Assembly (NCBI RefSeq): GCF_006345805.1
Contig: NC_043000.1
Coordinates: 163,246,001 to 163,310,000 of the forward strand
Reading direction: 5' to 3'
Length of the DNA stretch: 64,000 nucleotides
DNA from: Octopus sinensis
Lineage: Eukaryota
Part shown: piece by piece, positions 3,133-54,400 of the stretch
Position numbering within the stretch: the first letter of the stretch is position 1
Layout of the letters: every line of letters starts with the position of its first letter
Position numbers and translations under genes: made by a program
Notes under the pieces: model-generated
Database searches by the model: none
Seen by the model: only the letters and a program-made list of their open reading frames with translations
Told to the model about the DNA's origin: nothing

Positions 3133-4368
3133 TCAATATGAGCCCATGGAAAAAACATGAGTACATTTAAGTACCCCAGTTATATCTAAAAATAGAAATT
3201 CTTTGGTCAGTTCAGTACAACGTGTTGACTGTTCCCGACTACAGATTATAGTGGTTACCCTTCCCTGTAGCTAGTAGTAATAAGTCTACTACTAATATAG
3301 GATGAAGTTTTTTTTTCTACAGAAAAAAATTCCATCAAGAAATGTGGCAGCATATTAAAATACCTTTACGGTTAAAATTATAAACAACTTATAAGTAAGG
3401 GCTAAAGAAAATTATTTCAAAGCCAATATGCTGATAACAGACTATTAAATCGTCAATTTCCACATATAATTCACTCGCTACAGCAAAAACCGAAGAACTG
3501 AAATCGGGCAAGCCGGCCGTTAGAATTTTTAAAAAGTTCGTTATTTCTATATTGAATCAATTTCGGAATTAATCTCATAAAAGACTTATTCCTCTTCAGT
3601 AGAGCTCACGAAAGGATATAAATAAGATACTTACATGCTCCCATGGAAAAAGCCGAAGCAAAAAAACATGAGTACCTTTAAGTACCCCAGTTATATCTAA
3701 AAATAAAAATATGCTGCCACATTACTTGATGGAATTTTTTTCTGTAGAGAAAAAACTTCATCCTATATTAGTAGTAGACTTATTACTACTAGCTACAGGG
3801 ACTGGTAACCACTATAACCTGCAGTGGGGAACAGTCAACACGTTGTACTGACCAAAGAATTTTTATTCAGGAGGGGACCAGGAGGGGATCCACATCGGGT
3901 GACTTCTAGGAGGCGTCATTTTTGGATCTGCTATATAAGCCTGTATAAGTTCCGAGGCGGGCAAACTGTAGGGCTGAATCAGGGGACACACACTGTAGCT
4001 GCATCTCTAGTGTTTGTTTGCTTCTCTTCGTAAACACCCTTGTCTAGAAAGAGTGTTTCTCAAGCGCTCTAAACGCCATAATCTAAAATGGGTTTTAGTC
4101 TAGATCCCTAAACGCTAGTATCTAGAATAGATGTTTATCGAGTTCTCGAGTTTTCGGAAAATCGTCTCAAACTGTTGTTAATTTAACTCTTTAAATGCCA
4201 TTGCCTAAAAAGGCAGCTGTAAGACCTGTAAAAAGCCTCTGACCATGATTTTGGTCATCTTCGATACTTTCATTTTACCCAGAATCATAGTTTTCCAAAT
4301 ACTTTCACTTTTAATCCATCCTGAATTCTATCGTTACATCAAACTATAACAAACATACGGTTAAACAA
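3133..4368 (-). mobile_element. Probable Penelope-like (PLE) fragment: pLTR-like region with hammerhead, direct and inverted duplications
   Basis: Bounded by (TA)n on both sides and contains the hammerhead at 3537-3612. Direct repeat 3143-3195/3640-3707 and inverted repeat 3196-3356/3708-3863. A minus-strand piece FKELN*QQFETIFRKLENSINIYSRY loosely resembles PLE ORF N-termini. Confidence 0.45.
3537..3612 (-). ncRNA. Type I hammerhead ribozyme motif, intact core
   Basis: Minus strand: TTCGT-GAGC-TCTA [CTGAAGA] GGAAT...ATTCC [GAAA] TTGA-T-TCAA [TA] TAGA-AATA-ACGAA. All core nucleotides are present and three helices pair. AUA cleavage site between 3550 and 3549. Confidence 0.8.
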
Positions 4369-6661: not shown

Positions 6662-6734
<73 letters not shown>

Positions 6735-6885
6735 GACGGGCTTCTTTTAGTTTCCGCCTGCCAAATCCACTCACAAGTCTTGGGTCTGCCTGAGGCTATA
6801 TTAGAAGACGCCCAAGGTGCCACGCAGTGGTACTGAACCCAGAACCATGTGGTTGGTAATGAAGCTATTTACCTCACAGCCACTC
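6475..6885 (-). mobile_element. tRNA-derived SINE family A (internal CA/TA microsatellite, LINE-like tail)
   Basis: Colinear with copies at 39891-40386 and 46621-47034. The head has a B-box-like GGTTCAGTACC. Confidence 0.85.
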
Positions 6886-10097: not shown

Positions 10098-10144
10098 GAC
10101 TTGATTTATACTGAACACTTCCTATAAATATGTATATATATATG

Positions 10145-10215
10145 TGTGTGTGTCTATGTACTGTATATACATACATACATACATACATACATACGCACAC
10201 ACACACATACATACA

Positions 10216-10249
<34 letters not shown>

Positions 10250-18400: not shown

Positions 18401-18954
18401 AGTCTTATAGTTTTATGCGTGTGTATATCGAATTTGTTTTTTTACATATTTTTAGTTACATTAATGACTTGTAACTGTGATTTTTCTTTTTGCTATTAAT
18501 CGTTTCCTCTCTGCTTTCGCGAAACTCATCTGAGGCTGCAGCTACGTTACGTAAACATAAGCAATTACGTGTATAAACCCACAGTTACTGTGTGGATGGA
18601 ATACCTACAGATTCTTTGGTTGTTTGGCCTAGATGCTTGGTTTAACATTATGTTTAACATAAACGTCTATTGAACAACCGATTTCTACTACTCGACACAC
18701 TTCCTATTTTCTTGTCCCCAAATATTATTCCTGTATGTTTGTCCACAATCAGCTGATACTCATTTCTACCAATATCTTTGGGTAAAGGAATATGCCACCA
18801 CGCTCATTTTCTCAACTCCTTGGAATGTAGAGCTAATGGGGACTTCGACAAAATCGGAGTGTCTACTGAAAATATTAGCAAAATTTCCCTTAAATCGCAT
18901 TTTATTGCTTTTAATAAAGGGGAGGAGAATGCAATGTATTGTGTAATAGCTGAT

Positions 18955-19150
<196 letters not shown>

Positions 19151-19837
19151 TGATACCAACAACAAAAACGAATAACCACGGATGAAAAAGCCTTTGATTG
19201 CCAAAGGTTTGCCCAATAAGCCCTGACCTGAGGCTGAGTAACAACATCCTTGAAGTGTTTAATGCTGATCAAGTAAGAAAAGAATCTCTCTGACCTTGAA
19301 AAGTTAAGTAATTCGCATCATTTAATGAAGCCTTGCGTAAGATAAATAAATATTCATTCATCCTTAAGTTACATATTTTGTCGTATATGGATTTGTGGGA
19401 AAGATTATAAACTAACCCCGTAACCAAATACGATCCCAAGGGAAGAGAATAACAAAACTAAAAGCTTCGACTAACTCTATAGATTCCTTAAGTTTGGATA
19501 ACATGAATAGAAGCAAGTAAGACAGTTGCTACAAACTTCTTGACACGCACTCGCACACACACACGCACGCACACGCACAGACACACACACACACACACAC
19601 ACACATTCGTGTGTATATGCGTGTGTGTGCGTGTTTCTGTGCGTAGTACGATCTTTCGAAAATACGTCAGGAATGCATCATCAAAGAAGATATCTGACAC
19701 AAGTGCTCATAAATTTAGAACGTATTCTAAAGTGAAGCAAAAGAATAACACACACACACCACCACCACCACCACCACCACCACACAAACACAAACGTGCA
19801 CCTGCACAACCTCCAACCCCAACTCGTAACCTCCGAA

Positions 19838-30447: not shown

Positions 30448-31317
30448 TGTAACGAAATGTGTGTTTGTGTGTGTGTGTGTCTCTGTGTGTAAATATATGC
30501 ATGTAAGTAATTATGTATAATATGTGTGCGAGTGTAGAGACGTCTGTCCGCGACATCAAATTGATTGTGAGATATTGTGATTGTGGAGTTCCTAGCTGAT
30601 GTCTCTTATAAGGAAATGCTTCACAAAGAGAAAATTAATACAGTGAAGAATATATATATGTGTGCACGTGTGTGTGAGTCTCTGTGTGTGCTGTTTTTGT
30701 TATTGTTATTATCATCATCATCATCATCATAATTTGACTGCCAATTTCCCGTTTTTATTAGTCAATCATCTGTACAAAGGAAATCCATCAAACTAGAATA
30801 ACACTATTTGAACCAGAATCTGTGAGATTAATGATATCCAAAACGTAGTCTAATCACATTTCCTTATCTTATGTGCATTTCCACAGTGGTTGTAATATGT
30901 TATTAGTGAAACGATATCACACTTAGTTTTGATTAGTTTAATTTGTTAAATCTGTATTGGTAAAAGTCATTAGTAAATGTCTCATATCTCTTTACTTTAG
31001 TAACATAGACCATCATAGCCATCCGAATAGTCAGGGCTCTGGTATATTTACCAAAGGATCGACAATTGTTATTTAATCTATTGTTTTGTAATATGACCAT
31101 AACAAAGACATTTGTTATAATTGTTTTTACTGTCTTTTACATGGGTGCCATGAGTGGCACATCTCAATCATACTCATTTATACACATAACTCGTTCAAAT
31201 AGCATCACTCATTATCGAACAGCAATTTTTAATTGAAAATGCCAATAAAAGTGACGCTAAAATCACCTGTTTACCTGTCTATATTTTATTATATACATAA
31301 TTCTTTTCTATTTCTAG

Positions 31318-32660
31318 GTGAAGTCAATGGAGATGCCATGTTCTTCTTCAACCTATCAGCAATCAAAAAATCAGAAAAGGTTCTCCGAGCCGAAGTTCAT
31401 TTATACAAGAGAAAATCTCGCCCTTGGATGCCCAACGGATCAAAATTACAAATTCTATTACATGAAATTGGTCCGAACTATATTAGCAAGACAGGACGTG
31501 TGACTCTGCATCGTGCCAGCCATGGATGGCAATGGCGAGATGTTACCAATTCCGTTCTTAGTTGCCTCGCAACCTCCCGCAAATATCCTCATCTATTTGC
31601 AATAAACTTTCAAACGAAAAAGTCAGGGGGTAAAACACGTACAGTTGCACTCAAGAAATTTTCTATTCATCACTCTAGGCCCTTTCTTATTGTTTATTCT
31701 AACGAAACTGAAGTGGTCAAACTTGACCAGCTTGACAAATTGGCCGAGCGCCTTAAATTATTCTTACCGGGTCAGAACCGAGATAGAAGGCCTGCAAACC
31801 GTACTTCATTGGCAACCAAGTTAGTTCCGTCTACGTCTGGTTCGGATGACTTTTTACCGCCCTTGGATAGAAGCAAAAACAGCACTCGACTTGTACATCA
31901 TATCGCACACGGAATTGGTCCTAAAATGAGAATAGTACTTGACGAAATCGATCCCTTTCACTCGGTTGCTATAGAGAAACTAAACGAAACTACAGAAAAG
32001 CGACATAAAACAAGTGTACCGGTGAAAAAGATTAAAGACAAGAAAGAGTTTCAACGCCGGAAATATGAACAAGATTTTATACCAAACCAGGAAATAGTCA
32101 CAGCTTCACCGTCGTACGAAATTATGGATAATACAACGATGGAACCCGAGTTAGAAAATACAACCGACAGTGAAACAGAAGAGGTAGAAGCAGCCTCGTT
32201 AGCGTTTTCGGATGATTCCAGCATTACGGTGGACGCCAGTCAGACAAACCGATCGAAACGGTCGGTTTTGACTAATGAAATACCCCAAGAACCCGTCGAC
32301 TACAGAACAGTTACGAAATATAATATGCTTAATATTAATCCCGGGGTATTACAGCCACGCCAACGACCGAAGCAGAAGAAGATGTCTCGTCTCATTCCTT
32401 ACCCAAAGGATTCACAGCATAAAAAGAAAAGGCGCAAAAGAAAAAGGATTCGACGAGAAAAAGCCCAACGACGCCGACTTCGCTTTCCGAAGAATTGGAA
32501 AAACACAGACAGAAAGAATTTCCACAAGGAAGATAATTTGTGTAAAAAACACAAATTGCACGTTAATCTGGATGATATTGGATGGAGAGATTGGATAATA
32601 AGTCCTCAATGGTTAAATGCGCATTACTGCGCAGGAAATTGCCCTTTCCCATTGGCAGAG
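31318..32660 (+). CDS. BMP3: Internal coding exon of a BMP3/GDF10-like TGF-beta ligand: most of the prodomain, furin sites and N-terminal half of the cystine knot
   Basis: Open frame inside ORF 31233-32780, bounded by acceptor ttcttttctatttctag|G (phase 1) and donor GAG|gtgagt (phase 0). It starts with FFFNLSAIKKSEKVLRAEVHLY (TGF-beta propeptide) and contains RSKR-SVLTNEIP (cf. BMP3 KKRS...NNELP). It ends with CKKHKLHVNLDDIGWRDWIISPQWLNAHYCAGNCPFPLAE (cf. BMP3 [40 protein letters not shown]). Both intron positions match the vertebrate BMP3 exon 2 layout as I recall it. ADMP or another BMP is less likely but not excluded. Confidence 0.85.
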
Positions 32661-33750
32661 GTGAGTTGTGATTCTCGTTTTTTGTTTGTTTGTTGTTTTT
32701 GTTGTACTTTTTCCTTTTGTTATATTGTTTTCACATTTCACAATATTCCTTGCTTGTTTTCGTTCGGATTACGTTCATGAAGAGTGCAGAACAAAGAGTT
32801 GGAAATGGTAAAAGCAGCTCTTCCCAGCTCAGTATGAATGATAGCTAATATATTCAATTGTGGTTCATTTGGGAAAGGTCAATCTATATTAATTAATAAC
32901 TAACTATTTGTAATACGACCTGGTGTTATATATTCTAACAATTTCTACGTTATAGCTTCATATTTTGTTTATATTGATATTAACATATTACATTAGTGGC
33001 AGACCAAAAACTATCACTAAGATGGTTCTATCAGGATTTGAATTTAGTAAAGAGACATAATAAAATTTAAGGCAATGTACGGAGACAATTGTGTGAACAG
33101 AAATGATTATGAAGTGTATACATCGGAATAAGACCACGTGACTCACTTACACACTGGGCCTGAGAACATTCTATGGAGAGTCGAAATCACAATAGTCTAT
33201 TAGGTGATCAAGTACTTACAGCCATACTTGACGTGTGACTCTTCGCATTCACTGTTATCTTAACTCAATGCTAGATGTTTAAAAAAAAAACTCAAAAGGT
33301 TCTATTCTTCATTGAGAGTATGAGTGTGTACAAACGTACGCACACATTCACACACATGAATGCAACTCATAAATACACGCACGAACGCACACAGACACAC
33401 ACACAGACACAGACACACACACACACACAGAGGCAGACAGACAAATATCCAGGCTATACATATTCATACATACATATGGACTAGTGCTAACCTGCTACCT
33501 TTAAGATAACTTTTTATTACTGACATTGATTTTTATTCAGAGATTGTGTAGTGTATATTTTTAGTTGGAAGAGGGTGAATAGTGTAATACATCAATCTGA
33601 GAAAGTAAATGACAAAAGAAGGGTTCAGAAATACTGAGAGGATTCTGCACTGGCTGGAAAATTTTGCGGTTGTCCTTGTTGAAACGCAAGGTCAACTGAG
33701 ATACAGCAGACTGATGATGAAAGGTTTTATATGTTGTTTACGCTTGAATA

Positions 33751-39890: not shown

Positions 39891-40051
39891 GGCGCAGGAG
39901 TGGCTGTGTGATGAGTAGCTTGCTTACGAACCACATGGTTCTGGGTTCATTCCCACTGCGCGGCACCTTGGGCAAGTGTTTTCTACTATAGCTTCGGGCC
40001 GACCAAAGCCTTGTGAGTGGATTTAGTAGACGAAACTGAAAGAAGACCGTC

Positions 40052-40114
<63 letters not shown>

Positions 40115-40386
40115 CGACGAGCTTCTTTCAGTTTCGTATATATATATATATATATGTATGCGTGTGTATATGTTTATGTGTCTGTGTTTGTACCCCCAAC
40201 ATCGCTTGACAACCGATGCTGGTGTGTTTACGTCCCCGTAATTTAGCGGTTCGGCAAAAGAGACCGATTGAATAAGTACTAGGCTTAGAAAGAATAAGTC
40301 TTGGGATGGATTTGCTCGACTAAAGGCGGTGCTCCAGCATGGTCACAGTAAAATGACTGAAACAAGTAAAAGAGCTAAAAGAGAGT
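39891..40386 (+). mobile_element. tRNA-derived SINE family A, full length
   Basis: GGCGCAGGAGTGGCTGTGTG...GGTTCATTCCC head, internal (TA)n, and GGCGGTGCTCCAGCATGG...AAAAGAG tail. Confidence 0.9.
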
Positions 40387-41776: not shown

Positions 41777-43329
41777 TGTGCACTTTTTATCTTGCCCAAG
41801 GTGCCACGCAATGGGACTGGACCCGGAACCATGTGGTTGGGAAGCAAGCTTCTTTACCGCCCAGTCATGCCTACATACATACATACATACATACGTACGT
41901 ACATACATACATACATACATACATTAAATGCTTGTGTCTTATTTTTTCTCAGCTTTTCCTTGTCTTTCTGTGGCCACCTCACCAAACGCAGACGCCTGTT
42001 TCGTCTTAAATCTTTTAAATCGTTGCTGGATATCAGATGATACACAACGATAAAAGTAATAATAACAATAATAATTATAAGTTTCGCTTTTGTTTACTTT
42101 AAAACAAATTTATACCTACTCGCCCCCCATTAAAATCAAATACAGAAAAACGGAGATATACCGAATTATAATTTTTAAAAAAAGATCTTAGAATAAGATA
42201 AATAAATATACAAGCATTATATGAATGAAAATAAATAAGGAATAAATGGCAATTGGTTACCCCACCACCCCTTCCCGTCGCCGACTTCCACGTCTGAAAT
42301 AATTATATGCCATTATTTGTACGCGACAAAATGTCTCCCACCAAATATTGGTGTGGCGGCACCGACACTAGATGGGACTTAGTGAAGTATGGAGAGAGGG
42401 AGAAAGAGAGAGATCTGGAGTGCAGAAGAGAATGTTGGAGAAAGAAGAAGAGGAGGAGGGGGATAAAGGCGAAGAAGAAGGAAATAGAGGATATAAAATA
42501 GGTGGATACTGAAGTGAATATATTGACGAATAATAATAATAATAATAATAATAAGAAGAAGAAGAAGAAGAAGAGAAGAAGAAGAAGAAAGTGGTAGGAG
42601 ACGAAAGAGAGAAGAAATTAGGAAGATGGAATAGAAAAGAAAGAAGATGTTGAAGCAGCAAAACATGAACGGAGCAGAAAACAGAAATAAAGAAAAACGT
42701 GAACGAGAATAAAAAACAATGAAATACGAAGCAAATAACAAGTGCAACATTTTGCCTTCCAAAGATGTCGGTCTCCTTCCGACTGCTGTTGGTATTCTAC
42801 AAGGCATATCATTGGCCATTACCATAGTATTGGACACATACACTGGGGTGCATCTACTACTACTACTACTACTACTACTTACAAAAGTACCTTAGACTCC
42901 ATTACGAAAACCGTTTTATTGATTGGAAAATCTTGATACACCAACATGCAACGACCACATAATATTGGTTTCAAAATTTTGCCACAAGGCCAGCAGTTTT
43001 GGTGTAAAGTCGATTACATTGACCCCTGTGCTCAGCTGGTACTTATTTTATCAACCTCGAAAGGATTAAAGGCAAAGTCGATCTCAGCGGAATTTAGACT
43101 CAGAACGTAAGGACGGACGGAATGCCTTTAAGCACTTTTATTCGGTCTGCTAACGATTCTGCTGGCTCGCCGCCTTACCTGAAACCGTATATTAACGTTC
43201 TGTTCACACCCTCTTTCTCTTTTTTCTGTTTCTATTCGAACAATTTTGTTCTAAACAAGCACGTTGTGTCATAGAGGTACCTTTCTTCTTTTCTCCTTTA
43301 CCCCTACAAAAAAATCTATAAATTCTTTT

Positions 43330-43955
43330 TTCTTCTACCACCAAACTGAAATTATGCTAGTTCTATGGAGGCCATTTGTACTCAGCCATCTGGACTACTG
43401 CCCTCAACTATGGTCATCCTACTGTGTGAGTGTTACACCAGGAAGTTTGCATCAATGGAACAGATGAGCTACTGGGAGAAACTGAAAGAGCAACGATTCT
43501 ACTCTCTGGAGCGAAGACGGGAGAGGTATGCAATGATATGCAACTGGAAGATCCTGGAGGGGCTGACACCAAACTTTGGTATTGATAGCTATACTAGCCC
43601 CTGAACTGAACATCACTGCACTGTTCCAAAGGTCCCAGCTATCCCATCTACAGTGAGGACCATGTACGGCAATAGCTTGGGATTCATGGGCCCACAGCTA
43701 TTTAATGCCTTGCCAAATTACCAGAGTGATCTTCATGGTATAGGGGTACTTGTTTTCAAGAAACAACTTGACCTCCTGCTATCCAAGGTCGCAAATGGAC
43801 CTAAATCACGGCAAGAAACTCAAAAGAGGGTAGCAGTGTCGAACTCACTTCTTTAACAAAAGCCAATAGCATAAGATTGGCTATTGAAAAGTAATTACAC
43901 CGGCAGTGCTCCAGCATGGCCACAGCCTTCGGGCTGAAATGTGTAAAAGAATAAA
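43330..43955 (+). mobile_element. CR1/L2-group LINE 3' end (second family), internally deleted, with intact 3' tail
   Basis: LWRPFVLSHLDYCPQLWS; YTRKFASMEQMSYWEKLKEQRFYSLERRRERYAMICNWKILEGL; GPQLFNALP. The tail has a CAGCC-TTCG-GGCTG stem-loop followed by AAAAGAATAAA. Confidence 0.85.
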
Positions 43956-44311
43956 GCTTGCCTCCCCACCACATGGTTCCGGGTTCAATCCCACTGAGTG
44001 GAACTTGGATGTCTTCTACTCTAGCTTCGGGCAGATCAAAGCCTTGTGAATGGATCTGGTAGATGAAAACTGAAAGAAGCTCGTCGTATTTATATGTATA
44101 CGCCTGTGTGTACGTGTGTCTGTGTTTGGCTTCTAAATCTTTAATATATTTCGCAGTATATTATGTTTGCATAACGAAATACGGTGTACCTACGAGCAGT
44201 TAATACGTCCGCATTCCAGCAGTTGCCTAGAATGCATTAAACATGTACAATGGGTATATCCAATCGTTTTACACCGCTAAATATAGTGGCTATTTTGTGC
44301 AATGAATTCAT

Positions 44312-44376
44312 GGATGGTTAATGGGTGCTGAAGATGGAGCACTCCTGAAATATCTATATACATCCATTAACTATTT
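44312..44376 (+). ncRNA. Type I hammerhead ribozyme motif
   Basis: GTTAATGGGTG [CTGAAGA] T-GGAG-CA-CTCC-T [GAAA] TAT-CT-ATA [TA] CATCCATTAAC. Helix I is 11 bp or more and the AUA site lies between 44360 and 44361. A U.U mismatch closes helix II. Confidence 0.72.
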
Positions 44377-44483
44377 TTCTAACGTCGATCGCATTGATTA
44401 CAGTAAAATATTCGTATACGAAACATCAAAACTTTCAGTGCTGGCTCTAGAAAATCTTAGAGATAACTTTACAAAGTGAGATA

Positions 44484-44938
44484 TCTATCATATAAAATCC
44501 ATTCTGTTTGTCTGTGTGTGTCTTCAAGGATCTCGGGCATCCTCCATCCGATTGCGCTCAAATTTGATATGTGGATACCGACGGTATCAGGGCGTGTATA
44601 AATCATGAAAAAAATTACAAAAATCGATTCCAGGTGAGAATGTGATCGATAAAGCCGTGGGAACGTGCATTTGTACGCGCAAGTACATCAGCTGTTGTGA
44701 TGTACTTACTGGTACTTTAAACTCTTCGGTTGCATATTTGTGTGAATAAAATCGTTTTTTTTTGGAATAGAAAAAAGTCTATCTTTATTTCTTCTTTTGC
44801 TTGTGTCTGAAATTTAGGTTAAATCAGTGTTTCTCAAAGGAGAGGCCTATGGGACGGTCGGACAAGTTGCTTTGAGAACATTTGGTTTAAATGTTTGACA
44901 ACTCAGCACCGTCCATTGGACGGGGGGCGTTTTGCTCG
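44484..44938 (+). mobile_element. Probable non-autonomous Helitron
   Basis: Starts A|TCTATCATATAAAA and has a subterminal hairpin CCGTCC-ATT-GGACGG (44909-44923). Ends CTCG|T (CTAG-like). Confidence 0.55.
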
Positions 44939-46815: not shown

Positions 46816-46870
<55 letters not shown>

Positions 46871-47034
46871 TACGACAGGCTTCTTTCAGTTTCCGTCTAC
46901 CAAATCCACTCAAGGCATTGATCGACCCGGGGCTATAGCAGAAGACACTTGCCCAAGATGCCACGCAGTGGGACTGAACCCGGAACCATGTGGTTGGTTA
47001 GCAAGCTACTTACCACACAGCCACTCCTGCGCCT
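46621..47034 (-). mobile_element. tRNA-derived SINE family A, full length
   Basis: Reverse complement of the 39891 copy. Partial copies also occur at about 41781-41872, 43956-44090, 55530-55640 and 56080-56245. Confidence 0.9.
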
Positions 47035-47487: not shown

Positions 47488-47746
47488 TGTGTGAGTGTTA
47501 CACCAGGAAGTTTGCATGAATGGAACAGATGAGCTACTGGGAGAAACTGAAAGAGCAACGATTCTACTCTCTGGAGCGAAGACGGGAGAGGTATGCAATG
47601 ATATGCAAATGGAAGATCCTGGAGGGGCTGACACCAAACTTTGGTATTGATAGCTATACTAGCCCCTGAACTGAACATCACTGCACTGTTCCAAAGGTCC
47701 CAGCTATCCCATCTACAGTGAGGACCATGTACAGTGAGGACCATGT
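47488..47746 (+). repeat. Local 245-bp copy of LINE remnant 43423-43667 with a terminal 16-bp tandem duplication
   Basis: Two mismatches seen versus the source. ACAGTGAGGACCATGT occurs twice (47715-47730, 47731-47746). Confidence 0.9.
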
Positions 47747-49306: not shown

Positions 49307-50239
49307 CTCAATATGCATATTTCCCGTATACATGTGTGTGTATATATAACCTATGTGTGTGTGCATGTTTATTTATGCATATATGATTTATGTGGATGTG
49401 CATGTTTGGGTTTGTGTGTCGGGCGTTTTGTCTGTCATCTTTTTTGTGCCACTTTTGAACTGCATTGAAAGCGCTAAACCGGACACGCACTTCAAGACAT
49501 TCTTCTCATCCCAAATTGCATTTATACTTTCTGATTTCTGTTACCCTTTCTCCTAGGCTTCGTTTATCTCTCTTTTTCTGTCTCTATTTCTCTCTCACCC
49601 CCTTTCTCTCTTCTCGGCGAATTCCTTTTCTGCCATTTTGACTTCAAGCTTCCTCTACAATGTCCTTAGCCATATCTTTTATATTATATTTAATGATCAC
49701 CCACCAAGGATCCTGTCCATGAGGGAACAGTGGTTCTGTTTTTCTTCCTGCATCAATGAACTCCGGTTAACGCCTACATTTTGCATTGTTTTATGTAGGC
49801 CTGTAAGATAATGGTTAACACACACACACACAAACTTACACGCGTGTTTGTATATATATATATATAATATTTTATTCATTTAAGTGTTGCAGTCAAATGA
49901 ATGAAACACGTACAAGAATAAAAGAATATTATATGCACACACAAAAACACGCATTGGGTGTATGTATATGCTGGAACATCACATACACACACGCACACAT
50001 ACACACACACACACATATATATGTGTGTGTGTGTGTACATATATATATATATATATATACATATATATATAGGAGCACTCCGTCGGTTACGAAGACGAGG
50101 GTCCAGATGATACGATCGACGAAACAGCTTGCTCGTGAAACTAACGTGCAAGTGGCTGAGTACTCCATAAACACTTGTACCCTTAACGTAGTTCTTAGGG
50201 GAGATTCAGCGTGACACAGAGTCTGACAAGGCTCTGAAA

Positions 50240-52367: not shown

Positions 52368-52498
52368 TTAGCAATTAAGGACAACTACTTAATAAGGAAA
52401 ACTTAACAAGAAATTGTCAGGTAGATAGCGTGAAAACCTCATAAGAGAAAAAATTTCGAAAATAATTATTTCTTATTGAACATATTAATTTATATATA

Positions 52499-52897
52499 GA
52501 GGGCATTATACATCCATGCCAGATGGCATTATACATACATGCCACACGCTAAGAGGGACATTTAGTCATTTCTACCAAAAATATTACTAATCCCACCGAA
52601 TGCAATTTTTCAAAGTAAGACATTTAAAAAATATAGACCTGTATCACAGTGATTTCATACTTACGTATTCATCAGCAGGCCTGGATGTATCATACATAAA
52701 CGACCCTGCCTCGCTTAAGCCGATCAGCTAACTGATCAACATCAACGAAGCACATGGGTGAGTTTACATATATTACATCCTGTAAATGTCGGACTTTTAC
52801 GAATTGCATTTCGGGAAAGGAAAAGTTTTTTCGGAATAAAAATTTAGCGTGTGGCATGTATGTATAATGCCATCTGGCATGGATGTATAATGCCCTC
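52499..52897 (-). mobile_element. Hammerhead-containing insert with perfect 54-bp terminal inverted repeats in TA repeats
   Basis: 52499-52552 is the exact reverse complement of 52844-52897, and each arm has an internal ~23-bp direct repeat. TA/(TA)n lies on both sides and the hammerhead is at 52635-52682. Confidence 0.7.
52635..52682 (-). ncRNA. Type I hammerhead ribozyme motif, intact core
   Basis: Minus strand: AGGCCTG [CTGATGA] ATAC-GTAA-GTAT [GAAA] TCAC-T-GTGA [TA] CAGGTCT. Helix I is 7 bp, helix II has a GNRA loop, and the AUA site lies between 52642 and 52641. Confidence 0.85.
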
Positions 52898-52950
<53 letters not shown>

Positions 52951-53473
52951 GCACATTCAGAAGTACACTTCTGTTCTATTTCAGCTTGTCCTACATTTTC
53001 TGCACTATTTAGACACTTGGTAAACATATGGCATTTATTTTAACAATCGATGCTCATGTATGATATATGTATATGTGTACGGTACATGCTGACATACGCG
53101 CGCACGCACACACTCACACACACACGCGCACACACACACTCATATACATGCATAAATATGTACATATTTGTTAGTGTGTGTATCTGGTGTATGTATATGC
53201 TACGTTCAAAAAACTCTAAGCGCACATACTGTACTAACGCGAAGAAATAGGACGCACGCACACCCACCTGTGCGCGCAAATACCCACACACACAGGTATA
53301 TAAACAAACACATCTGTGTGTGTGCGCGTGCGTGTGTGTGCACGTGTATGCGTGCGTGTGTGTGTAGTGTCTGATATGATGTATAATTTGATGTACCAAC
53401 GAAGTATGCTAAAAAGGAATATGAATCATCCTCAGTGTCTTGGGCCCTTGCAATATATTAAAGAAATCATCAA

Positions 53474-53475
<2 letters not shown>

Positions 53476-53558
<83 letters not shown>

Positions 53559-53559
53559 G

Positions 53560-53593
<34 letters not shown>

Positions 53594-53627
53594 TGTTATT
53601 GTTATTATTATATTATTATTATTATCA

Positions 53628-53692
<65 letters not shown>

Positions 53693-53700
53693 CAACATTA
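53476..53700 (+). repeat. (ATT)n microsatellite
   Basis: Direct reading. Also at 10023-10096 and 57238-57333 (with ACT repeats). Confidence 0.95.
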
Positions 53701-53701
53701 T

Positions 53702-54400
53702 TAAGGCGGCGAGCTGGTAGAATCGTTAGCACGCCGGGCGAAATGCTTAGCGGTATTTCGTCTATCACTACGTTCTGAGTTCAAATTCCGCCGGGGTCGA
53801 CTTTGCCTTTCATCCTTTCTGGGTCAATAAATTAAGTACCCGTCTAGTACTGGGATCATTGTGATCGATTGTACCCCTCCTCACAAAGATCCTTGTGCCT
53901 ATAGTGGAAAGGATTGTTATTATCATTATTGAGTCGATAAATTAACTACCAGTTATGCGCTGGGGTGGATGTAGTCGACCGATCCCCTCCCCCAAAATTC
54001 CAGTCTTGTGCCTATATTAGAAAGGATTATGATGATTATTAAGGCGGTGAACTGGTGGAATAGCTACCGCGCCGAGGAAAATGTTTAGCGACATTTCTTC
54101 CGACTTTATATTTTCAGTTCAAAGTCGGCCGAAGCTGACTTTGCCTTTCATCCTTTCGGGGTCAATGGTATAATTAACAGTTGACTGCCGGGGTGGATGA
54201 TATCGACTTATCTCCTCCCCCCAAATTTGAAATCATTATTATTATTGATACGAAAGCAGAGAACTGACGTAATTGTTAGTACACCGAATTTTGTCGGTCC
54301 TTGTTCTGAGTTCAAATTCTGCCGATAAGTACCTGATTAGCACTGGGGTCGGCGTTATGAACTTCTCCACCAGTCAAAAGTGTAGGCCTTGTGCCAGAAT
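53702..54400 (+). mobile_element. Head-to-tail cluster of about four SINE family B copies
   Basis: Copies at about 53702-53915, 53930-54030 (3' half), 54041-54236 and 54250-54400, separated by short (ATT)n runs. Confidence 0.8.

What the first reader, a model, noticed from the sequence alone, without database searches (positions are those of the whole stretch)
44312..44376. Sense-strand hammerhead with a long helix I in the presumed second intron of the BMP3-like gene
Seen: helix I of 11 bp or more (extendable to about 16 with G.U pairs), intact core, GGAG/CUCC helix II closed by a U.U mismatch, AUAU-CU-AUAU helix III and an AUA site. It lies on the same strand as and downstream of the BMP3-like exon, whose last exon was not found in the window. 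Inference: if still inside the intron it could cut the nascent pre-mRNA. Intronic self-cleaving ribozymes are known in other animals. Unlike the others, it has no flanking (TA)n or IR, so it may be older or retained.
Basis: partly seen in the sequence, partly recalled or inferred. Interest (0 to 1): 0.7.

Follow-up and report, generated by a model that had tools for sequence, protein, structure and literature searches.

The report
Lone minimal hammerhead in BMP3-like intron
A real but structurally weak hammerhead-ribozyme motif sits, on the sense strand, about 11.7 kb into a very long intron of a BMP3-like gene; it is most likely a stray copy left by a ribozyme-carrying mobile element, an ordinary kind of thing in invertebrate genomes, and nothing shows that it regulates the gene.

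Summary
Window 44312-44376 (+) has every invariant hammerhead core base (CUGAAGA...GAA, A15.1-U16.1, A17), a 16-bp helix I (12 Watson-Crick, 4 G.U) and a predicted cut between 44360 and 44361. It is not chance: my descriptor finds 3 motifs in the window, against 0.013 per shuffle and about 0.006 per scrambled-core decoy on the real sequence.

It is a weak hammerhead. It has U.U at 10.1/11.1. Helices II and III are each effectively 3 bp, because the 2-nt loops are impossible. No helix I loop exists for tertiary contacts. The ribozyme fold is 5-7 kcal/mol worse than a misfold, and Rfam gives no match.

It is single copy, not tandem, and no relative was found anywhere. It lies next to a SINE tail, in a 372-bp patch bracketed by a 17/20 direct repeat. 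The last BMP3-like exon is not in the window, so the site is very probably intronic and sense-strand.

Best reading: a solitary minimal type I hammerhead of the Penelope-like-element/retrozyme kind, at most a slow cleaver. A role in pre-mRNA processing is untested and unlikely. This is a new member of a known kind, of low to moderate interest.

The parts
44312..44327 (+). Helix I, 5' strand (GGAUGGUUAAUGGGUG)
   Evidence: Pairs with 44361-44376 over 16 contiguous bp, with pair probabilities 0.92-1.0 for the inner 15. Also reported as inverted repeat I3.
44328..44334 (+). Core C3-A9 (CUGAAGA; N7 = A)
   Evidence: Read directly from the sequence. It is the only CTGANGA...GAAA site on the + strand of the window.
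44335..44346 (+). Helix II: U10.1, GGAG, CA, CUCC, U11.1. Effectively a U.U mismatch plus 3 bp (GGA/UCC) plus a GCAC loop.
   Evidence: Helix II alone is -1.8 kcal/mol and its pair probability is about 0.11.
44347..44349 (+). Core G12 A13 A14 (GAA)
44350..44359 (+). Helix III, AUAU-CU-AUAU. Effectively A15.1-U16.1 plus 2 A-U pairs plus a UCUA loop.
   Evidence: Helix III alone is +2.6 kcal/mol and its pair probability is about 0.
44360..44361 (+). A17 and C1.1: predicted self-cleavage site between 44360 and 44361 (AUA triplet)
   Evidence: Follows from standard hammerhead numbering applied to the sequence. Cleavage itself was not tested.
44361..44376 (+). Helix I, 3' strand (CAUCCAUUAACUAUUU)
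44134..44505 (+). 372-bp single-copy patch carrying the hammerhead near its middle; a possible retro-insertion unit
   Evidence: Bracketed by the 17/20 direct repeat 44114-44133 / 44506-44525. It has no other copy in the window. It folds at -81.5 kcal/mol, z = -2.35, and is not rod-like. The boundaries are suggestive only.
44114..44133 (+). Left copy of the 20-nt direct repeat (GTGTGTCTGTGTTTGGCTTC), within the SINE microsatellite tail
44506..44525 (+). Right copy of the 20-nt direct repeat (GTTTGTCTGTGTGTGTCTTC)
44476..44513 (+). Diverged second copy of the hammerhead's 3' half (GAG instead of GAA, helix III, AUCCAUU). It is not a functional hammerhead.
   Evidence: Local alignment to 44345-44380 has p about 0.002 against shuffles. 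The rest of a 131-nt unit is not repeated.
43955..44100 (+). tRNA-derived SINE copy whose (TA)n/(TG)n tail runs to about 44133, immediately upstream of the patch
   Evidence: Five copies in the window align, with a B-box-like GGTTCCGGGTTCA and microsatellite tails.
31300..32660 (+). BMP3-like exon (propeptide plus the first part of the TGF-beta domain), ending at the donor GTGAGT at 32661. This is the host gene context.
   Evidence: ORF 31233-32780. It matches BMP probes by tblastn. Its homologues carry PF00019/PF00688. Donor site read. The first and last exons are absent from the window.

Best explanation
This is a solitary, minimal type I hammerhead motif that descends from a ribozyme-bearing retroelement of the Penelope-like-element (PLE) / non-LTR retrozyme kind. 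It landed beside a SINE microsatellite tail inside the long second intron of a BMP3-like gene, and by chance in sense orientation. In its element of origin, such a hammerhead cuts multimeric element transcripts: the 2'-OH of residue 17 attacks the adjacent phosphate and gives 2',3'-cyclic phosphate and 5'-OH ends. These motifs usually work as a dimer with a neighbouring copy. Here the copy is alone. It lacks the loop-loop tertiary contacts, has U.U instead of G10.1-C11.1, and misfolds in prediction. So in the host pre-mRNA it is most likely inert or a very slow cleaver. If it did cut, the 16-bp helix I would keep the two halves annealed. Shown: the motif, its non-random nature, its single-copy state in the window, its strand and position relative to the exon, and its predicted thermodynamic weakness. 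Inferred: the transposon origin, the intronic status, and the low activity.
For: All core positions and the three-helix layout are present.

Chance is excluded. The window gives 3 hits against 0.013 per shuffled window and 0.0056 per scrambled-core decoy on the real sequence.

Two further, unrelated hammerhead motifs lie in the same 64 kb, inside small TIR-bounded elements flanked by (TA)n. So hammerhead-bearing mobile DNA is present, and apparently young, in this genome.

PLEs insert preferentially into microsatellites and carry hammerheads in their pLTRs (PMC8557442; PMC4209133). Penelope elements are abundant and expanded in octopus genomes (PMC8967140).

Most PLE-type hammerheads occur as dispersed single motifs of extreme sequence variability, and single motifs show no detectable cleavage (PMC4209133). 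Solo retrozyme monomers are common, and 42-44% of Xenopus retrozyme copies (monomers, dimers and multimers together) are intronic.

A natural retrozyme hammerhead with a U.U at the base of helix II exists. It is the axolotl HHR_Amex2, and it cleaves weakly as a monomer: 22% in 1 h (PMC7229834).

The candidate sits in a 372-bp patch with 17/20 flanking direct repeats next to a SINE tail.

The hammerhead fold is -16.0 kcal/mol against an MFE of -21.2. Helix III alone is +2.6 kcal/mol. The pair probabilities of helices II and III are about 0.11 and about 0, and the gap is worse at 10-25 C.

There is no tandem partner.
Against: No second copy of the 372-bp unit or of the 65-nt motif was found. It is absent elsewhere in the window. 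It is absent from 5.8 billion predicted proteins searched with a 52-aa ORF and with a six-frame query. It is absent from metagenome, viral and prokaryote contig scans. So membership of a repeat family is not demonstrated. However, no cephalopod genome could be searched at the DNA level.

No PLE reverse-transcriptase or endonuclease remnant was identified nearby; I only eyeballed six-frame translations and ran one Pfam scan of selected ORFs.

The motif does not fit the PLE min-HHR consensus, which has a short helix I, a 6-8 bp helix II and G10.1-C11.1.

An intact 13/13 core and a mismatch-free 16-bp helix I in an otherwise orphan sequence could also mean constraint rather than youth.

Nearest-neighbour folding ignores the tertiary stabilisation of the hammerhead core, so the misfolding prediction is only indicative.
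Confidence: 0.65

Rival explanations
1. Domesticated or retained intronic ribozyme. The hammerhead cleaves the nascent BMP3-like pre-mRNA co-transcriptionally in the long intron and thereby tunes the yield of spliced mRNA, like the conserved intronic hammerheads of amniote genes.
For: It is on the sense strand, 11.65 kb into an intron that continues for at least 19.6 kb more. That leaves minutes of transcription time for even a slow ribozyme (inference). The core is fully intact and helix I has no mismatch, yet no repeat family was found. Intronic hammerheads with proposed roles in mRNA biogenesis exist in amniotes (PMC6155905).
Against: The amniote intronic hammerheads are canonical, with conserved loop 1-loop 2 contacts and G10.1-C11.1; this one has neither. 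The fold is predicted to be out-competed by 5-7 kcal/mol. No conservation data exist. Two other hammerhead motifs in the same window sit in obvious mobile elements, which makes a transposon origin the simpler reading. In Xenopus, 42-44% of retrozyme copies are intronic, so intronic placement is not special.
Confidence: 0.07
2. Copy of a still-active small non-autonomous element (a retrozyme-like solo monomer or the remnant of a dimer). Its hammerhead works in the element's own transcripts, pairing as a dimer with copies elsewhere, and is unrelated to the host gene.
For: The patch is 372 bp with flanking direct repeats, a size within the 170-400 nt retrozyme range (PMC7229834). There is a diverged second copy of the hammerhead's 3' half 131 nt downstream. 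Helix III (AUAU CU AUAU) is short and nearly palindromic, as is typical of dimer-acting type I hammerheads (PMC4209133). The neighbouring hammerhead elements have 95-100% identical TIRs, which shows recent activity.
Against: There is no tandem array. The rest of the putative unit is not repeated. No other copies were found by any route. The predicted structure of the unit is not rod-like.
Confidence: 0.2
3. Chance look-alike: an ordinary 16-bp inverted repeat whose 33-nt loop happens to spell the hammerhead core.
For: The genome is AT-rich and full of inverted repeats. Rfam's hammerhead models do not match, even at E<=10 on a 191-nt slice. Helices II and III are minimal.
Against: Shuffles give 0.013 hits per window, and none with helix I >=6. 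539 scrambled-core decoys on the real sequence give 3 hits in total, all with helix I <=6. My estimate of 1e-8 to 1e-7 per hairpin makes even one such case per genome unlikely (inference). Rfam also misses the cleaner motif at 52635-52682, so its silence is not informative.
Confidence: 0.02

Closest known systems
Minimal type I hammerheads of Penelope-like elements (Cervera & de la Pena 2014, PMC4209133)
   Same: Both are metazoan type I motifs without loop-loop tertiary contacts. Helix III is weak and short with a near-palindromic sequence. They are mostly found as dispersed single motifs of very variable sequence. They are associated with microsatellite-targeting retroelements. Single motifs have little or no activity.
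   Different: PLE min-HHRs typically have a short helix I (4-5 bp), a long helix II (6-8 bp), an extra unpaired base after A9, and a highly conserved G10.1-C11.1. The candidate has a 16-bp helix I, a 3-4 bp helix II and a symmetric U.U. No PLE ORF or pLTR was found next to it.
Non-LTR retrozyme hammerheads, especially axolotl HHR_Amex2 (Cervera & de la Pena 2020, PMC7229834)
   Same: Both are type I. HHR_Amex2 also has a U.U mismatch at the base of helix II and a 2-3 bp helix III capped by a tetraloop. The unit size is a few hundred bp with low GC. Monomeric cleavage is weak. Solo monomers exist and are often intronic.
   Different: Retrozymes are defined by tandem repeats with a hammerhead in each unit, and usually by loop 1-loop 2 contacts. 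Here there is one copy, no tandem array, and no loop in helix I.
Conserved intronic hammerheads of amniotes (Rfam HH9/HH10; RECK, CTCL, DTNB introns; PMC6155905)
   Same: Sense-strand type I hammerhead inside an intron of a protein-coding gene.
   Different: The amniote motifs are canonical, with tertiary contacts and G10.1-C11.1, are ultraconserved across species, and are matched by Rfam models. The candidate is minimal, unmatched by Rfam, and of unknown conservation.
Laboratory 'minimal' hammerheads with long substrate-binding arms
   Same: Uninterrupted helix I without loops, a short stem-loop II, and only the 13-nt core (comparison from general knowledge).
   Different: Laboratory constructs keep G10.1-C11.1 and a stable helix III. 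They need about 10 mM Mg2+ for about 1 per min. The candidate is weaker on both counts.

Membership tests
Hammerhead ribozyme (type I topology) | Invariant core C3 U4 G5 A6 N7 G8 A9 ... G12 A13 A14 | tested here: met
   CUGAAGA at 44328-44334 and GAA at 44347-44349.
Hammerhead ribozyme (type I topology) | A15.1-U16.1 pair and a non-G residue 17 at the cleavage site | tested here: met
   A44350 pairs with U44359, and A44360 is followed by C44361 (AUA triplet).
Hammerhead ribozyme (type I topology) | Three helices around the core, with helix I open and helices II and III capped | tested here: inconclusive
   Helix I is solid (16 bp, probability about 1). Helices II and III are possible only as 3 bp plus a tetraloop. 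Their predicted probabilities are about 0.11 and about 0, and the hammerhead fold is 5.2 kcal/mol above the MFE. Nearest-neighbour models ignore core tertiary structure.
Hammerhead ribozyme (type I topology) | G10.1-C11.1 pair closing helix II (nearly invariant in natural hammerheads) | tested here: not met
   U44335. U44346. There is a precedent in axolotl HHR_Amex2 (PMC7229834).
Hammerhead ribozyme (type I topology) | Loop 1 / loop 2 tertiary contacts of full-length natural hammerheads | tested here: not met
   Helix I is an uninterrupted 16-bp duplex with no bulge or internal loop. Loop 2 is only 2-4 nt.
Hammerhead ribozyme (type I topology) | Match to a curated covariance model (Rfam Hammerhead_1, _3, _II, HH9, HH10) | tested here: not met
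   No hit at gathering score and none at E<=10 on a 191-nt slice. The test has little power: the cleaner motif at 52635-52682 is also missed.
Hammerhead ribozyme (type I topology) | Site-specific self-cleavage giving 2',3'-cyclic phosphate and 5'-OH ends | not testable with these tools
   Needs in-vitro transcription or end-specific RNA sequencing.
Penelope-like element min-HHR | Location in the pLTR of a PLE (RT + GIY-YIG ORF nearby, or a truncated copy of one) | tested here: inconclusive
   No long ORF is evident in the six-frame translations of 41.9-46.9 kb, which were inspected by eye only; a Pfam scan of selected window ORFs, including the nearest LINE-like frame, found no RT or endonuclease. 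The only nearby coding remnant is a LINE-3'-end-like frame at 43.3-43.75 kb. This was not a full HMM scan of the region.
Penelope-like element min-HHR | Architecture: helix I 4-5 bp, helix II 6-8 bp, an extra base after A9, G10.1-C11.1, and palindromic 15.2-16.2 / loop 3 | tested here: not met
   Helix I is 16 bp, helix II is 3-4 bp, and 10.1/11.1 is a symmetric U.U. Only the near-palindromic helix III fits (against PMC4209133).
Non-LTR retrozyme | Tandem repeats of about 170-400 bp, each with a type I hammerhead | tested here: not met
   TRF finds no array. The motif is single copy in the window. Only a 37-nt diverged duplicate of the 3' half exists. A solo monomer remains possible.
Non-LTR retrozyme | Family of related copies in the genome; expression as unit-length linear or circular RNA | not testable with these tools
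   No cephalopod genome or transcriptome could be searched at the DNA level. Indirect searches were negative.
Conserved (domesticated) intronic hammerhead | Presence and sequence conservation at the orthologous intron site across species | not testable with these tools
   The only close relative recovered is a 2.36-kb Logan contig, L001, covering the exon (90.3% nt identity). It does not reach the site.
Conserved (domesticated) intronic hammerhead | Lies inside an intron, on the sense strand | tested here: met
   The exon is on the + strand and ends at the GTGAGT donor at 32661. The last exon is not in 32.7-64 kb. The other cephalopod locus also has >10 kb of intron. Intronic status is inferred, since there is no transcript evidence.

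The most novel reading that the evidence does not exclude
This is a retained, host-co-opted hammerhead. It would be conserved at this position in octopod BMP3-like genes and would nick the nascent pre-mRNA during the many minutes needed to transcribe the rest of the >31-kb intron. The unusually long 16-bp helix I would hold the cleaved ends together for re-ligation or controlled release. That would make it the first conserved intronic hammerhead outside amniotes.
Probability: 0.05. Interest if true: 0.75.

Novelty: new member of a known kind. Interest (0 to 1): 0.3.

Why it matters
Hammerhead motifs scattered by Penelope-like elements and retrozymes are already known to be abundant in invertebrate genomes, so one more solitary, weak copy in an intron changes little. 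Two things give it modest value. First, none of the papers returned by my two full-text searches (hammerhead ribozyme with octopus, or with cephalopod and squid terms) describes hammerheads in cephalopods. Yet this one 64-kb window holds three unrelated motifs, which suggests that octopod genomes carry a sizeable and partly young population of hammerhead-bearing elements. Second, a sense-strand copy in a very long intron of a developmental signalling gene is a convenient natural test case. It could show whether minimal hammerheads cleave at all in vivo, and whether such cleavage is tolerated during splicing.

Tried and rejected
- **Rfam.** The whole window at gathering score gave nothing. The 'evalue' scan was swamped by microsatellite pseudo-miRNA hits. 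Narrow slices around the candidate and around the 52.6-kb motif gave no hammerhead family. I conclude the Rfam models are insensitive to these minimal variants.
- **Other copies in the window.** A 30-mer search with 3 mismatches and blastn of 43.0-45.8 kb against the window found none for 44100-44900.
- **Homology among the three hammerhead-bearing elements.** None was found. An 11-nt identity with the TIR of element B was judged to be chance.
- **Tandem or dimeric organisation.** TRF was negative. A test of a 131-nt unit was negative.
- **Relatives elsewhere.** Exact look-up of the 52-aa ORF found no record. Homology searches with that ORF and with a six-frame concatenation of the 372-bp unit found no hits. 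Two metagenome scans gave 0 hits and one bacterial chance hit. The viral contig scan gave 0 hits. The prokaryote genome scan gave 11 coding-sequence coincidences without a hammerhead.
- **Orthologous-site comparison.** The only octopod relative is a 2.36-kb contig that stops 11 kb short of the site. The other cephalopod locus has no hammerhead hit in 21.7 kb, and its introns were judged too diverged to align; I did not align them.
- **PLE coding remnants.** A Pfam scan of selected window ORFs was negative.
- **Rejected ideas.** A pre-miRNA hairpin, because the stem is too short and the loop is 33 nt. A rod-like viroid or retrozyme fold of the 372-nt unit, which is not supported. A hammerhead formed with the downstream 3'-half copy, because it has GAG in place of GAA.

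Full report
**What is there.** Window 44312-44376 on the + strand reads GGATGGTTAATGGGTG CTGAAGA T GGAG CA CTCC T GAA ATAT CT ATAT A | CATCCATTAACTATTT.
- In hammerhead numbering this gives C3 U4 G5 A6 A7 G8 A9, then U10.1, helix II and U11.1, then G12 A13 A14, then A15.1, helix III and U16.1, then A17. The scissile bond lies between 44360 and 44361.
- One refinement: hairpin loops of two nucleotides cannot form. Helix II is therefore effectively a U.U mismatch plus GGA/UCC closed by GCAC. Helix III is AUA/UAU closed by UCUA.

**Is it more than chance?** Yes.
- I wrote a descriptor: CUGANGA; a helix II of at least 3 bp, with a mismatch allowed at 10.1/11.1; GAA; an A15.1-U16.1 helix III of at least 3 bp; a non-G residue 17; and a helix I of at least 4 bp.
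- It finds three sites in the window: 3546-3603 (-), 44312-44376 (+) and 52635-52682 (-).
- 150 dinucleotide-preserving shuffles give a mean of 0.013 hits, and none with helix I of 6 bp or more.
- Shuffling destroys real inverted repeats, so I also ran the same descriptor on the real sequence with 539 permuted versions of the core letters. Together they gave three single hits, all with a helix I of 4-6 bp. The true core gave three.
- Only four inner-motif sites exist in the window at all.
- My rough calculation is that a random 33-nt loop satisfies the inner constraints with probability 1e-8 to 1e-7. Even genome-wide, a 16-bp-stem example is not expected by chance (inference).

**How good a hammerhead is it?** Weak.
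- The nearly invariant G10.1-C11.1 pair is replaced by U.U.
- Helix I has no bulge or internal loop, and loop 2 is tiny. So the loop 1-loop 2 contacts that give natural hammerheads activity at physiological Mg2+ (PMC6155905) cannot form.
- ViennaRNA puts the hammerhead fold at -16.0 kcal/mol against an MFE of -21.2. In the MFE fold, A7-G10.2 pair with the 5' strand of helix III.
- Helix III alone is +2.6 kcal/mol. The pair probabilities are about 0.11 for helix II and about 0 for helix III. The gap grows to 5.5-6.9 kcal/mol at 10-25 C.
- Rfam gives no hammerhead hit at gathering score, nor at E<=10 on a 191-nt slice. It also misses the cleaner motif at 52.6 kb, so I give this little weight.
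- Published precedent matters here. Invertebrate type I hammerheads normally have 2-3 bp helices III. An axolotl retrozyme hammerhead, HHR_Amex2, carries exactly a U.U at the base of helix II; it cleaves weakly as a monomer and better as a dimer (PMC7229834). Single PLE min-hammerheads show no detectable cleavage (PMC4209133).

**Genomic context.**
- The large ORF at 31233-32780 (+) is a BMP3-like exon. It carries the TGF-beta propeptide and the start of the cystine-knot domain. It ends at a consensus donor, CPFPLAE|GTGAGT, at 32660/32661.
- Full-length cephalopod orthologues P0003 and P0004 show one more exon of 63 residues (KLHPSNH...CACR) and an upstream first exon. Neither is anywhere in the window. 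Neither lies within 10 kb of the exon in another cephalopod's locus, L002.
- The motif is therefore very probably 11.65 kb inside an intron longer than 31 kb, on the sense strand. This is an inference, because there is no transcript evidence.
- Immediately upstream lie a LINE-3'-end-like fragment (43.3-43.75 kb) and a tRNA-derived SINE copy (43955-44100). The SINE's (TA)n/(TG)n tail runs to about 44133.
- The hammerhead lies near the middle of a 372-bp single-copy patch (44134-44505). A 17/20 direct repeat brackets the patch. This could be a target-site duplication, or just two TG-rich patches.
- A diverged duplicate of the hammerhead's 3' half lies at 44476-44513 (p about 0.002). The rest of a 131-nt unit is not repeated, and TRF sees no array.

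**The neighbours.** The other two descriptor hits are on the minus strand. Each sits near the middle of a small foldback-like element.
- One is 52496-52900, with perfect 57-bp terminal inverted repeats and (TA)n on both sides.
- The other is 3250-3813, with about 105-bp inverted repeats that are 95-97% identical.
- The three elements share no sequence beyond the core.
- This fits what is published for PLE-associated hammerheads: insertion bias for microsatellites, inverted arrangements, extreme sequence variability, and mostly dispersed single motifs (PMC8557442; PMC4209133).
- It also fits the abundance of Penelope elements and tRNA-SINEs in octopus genomes (PMC8967140).

**Search for relatives.** None was found.
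- The 52-aa ORF across the motif is not on record and has no homologues.
- A six-frame concatenated query of the 372-bp unit found nothing among 5.8 billion predicted proteins.
- Metagenome, viral and prokaryote contig scans gave only chance matches.
- The one close relative recovered, Logan contig L001, is 90.3% identical in nucleotides but covers only the exon region.
- So I can show neither a repeat family nor orthologous conservation. No cephalopod genome was searchable at the DNA level, which is the main limit of this report.

**Interpretation.**
- Most likely reading, about 0.65: a solitary minimal type I hammerhead left by a PLE/retrozyme-type element. It happens to be in sense orientation in an intron, and it is inert or very slow. 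A related possibility, about 0.2, is that the unit is a copy of a still-active small element whose hammerhead works in the element's own transcripts.
- Intronic placement is unremarkable. In Xenopus, 42-44% of retrozyme copies are intronic, and they are only modestly depleted there.
The intact core, the mismatch-free helix I and the apparent orphan status are compatible with constraint. But nothing positive supports it, and the structural deficits argue against efficient cleavage. I give it about 0.05-0.07. Chance is about 0.02.

**Verdict.** This is a new member of a known kind, with interest about 0.3. The decisive data are a DNA-level search of octopod genomes, end-specific RNA sequencing at 44360/44361, and a simple in-vitro cleavage assay with core-dead and 10.1/11.1-repaired controls.

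Noticed in passing
window 52496-52900 (hammerhead 52635-52682, minus strand): A small foldback-like element with perfect 57-bp terminal inverted repeats, flanked by (TA)n on both sides. It carries a cleaner type I hammerhead motif (CUGAUGA, A10.1-U11.1, 7-bp helix I, AUCA/UGAU helix III). The hammerhead fold is -9.7 kcal/mol against an MFE of -12.1. Rfam does not call it.
   Followed up: partly
window 3250-3813 (hammerhead-like 3546-3603, minus strand): A second foldback-like element, with about 105-bp inverted repeats (95-97% identical). It holds a hammerhead-like motif (CUGAAGA, G10.1-C11.1, an 18-nt loop 2, and a helix I of only 4 bp). The fold is predicted to be very unfavourable (-0.5 against -11.7 kcal/mol). 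A 50-nt piece of the element recurs at 3150-3199.
   Followed up: partly
window 43955-44100, 39917-40066, 46861-47007 (-), 6720-6856 (-), 41796-41851 (-): Copies of a tRNA-derived SINE (with a B-box-like GGTTCCGGGTTCA) ending in (TA)n or (TG)n microsatellite tails. This is consistent with the SINE-rich octopus repeat landscape.
   Followed up: partly
window 43423-43667 and 47488-47732: A 245-bp direct duplicate at 99% identity. It lies within a reading frame that looks like the 3' end of a non-LTR (LINE) ORF2. This is either a recent LINE copy pair or a small segmental duplication.
   Followed up: no
window 44476-44513: A diverged second copy of the candidate hammerhead's 3' half (GAG for GAA), 131 nt downstream of the first and ending at the edge of the 372-bp patch. 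Its origin is unexplained.
   Followed up: partly
window 31233-32780; loci L001, L002: Only the large middle exon of the BMP3-like gene is in the window, so both neighbouring introns exceed 31 kb. Database 'proteins' P0001 and P0002 are read-through ORFs of this exon into the intron, not spliced products.
   Followed up: yes
window-wide (e.g. 10135-10216, 40030-40137, 49983-50054): (TA)n, (TG)n and mixed microsatellites produce hundreds of sub-threshold pseudo-miRNA matches (mir-297, mir-3149, mir-5014 and others) in a permissive Rfam scan. None reaches gathering score.
   Followed up: yes
window 18766-19272 and 53316-53778: Long trinucleotide-type simple repeats show up as poly-N, poly-V, poly-L and poly-I ORFs on both strands.
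   Followed up: no
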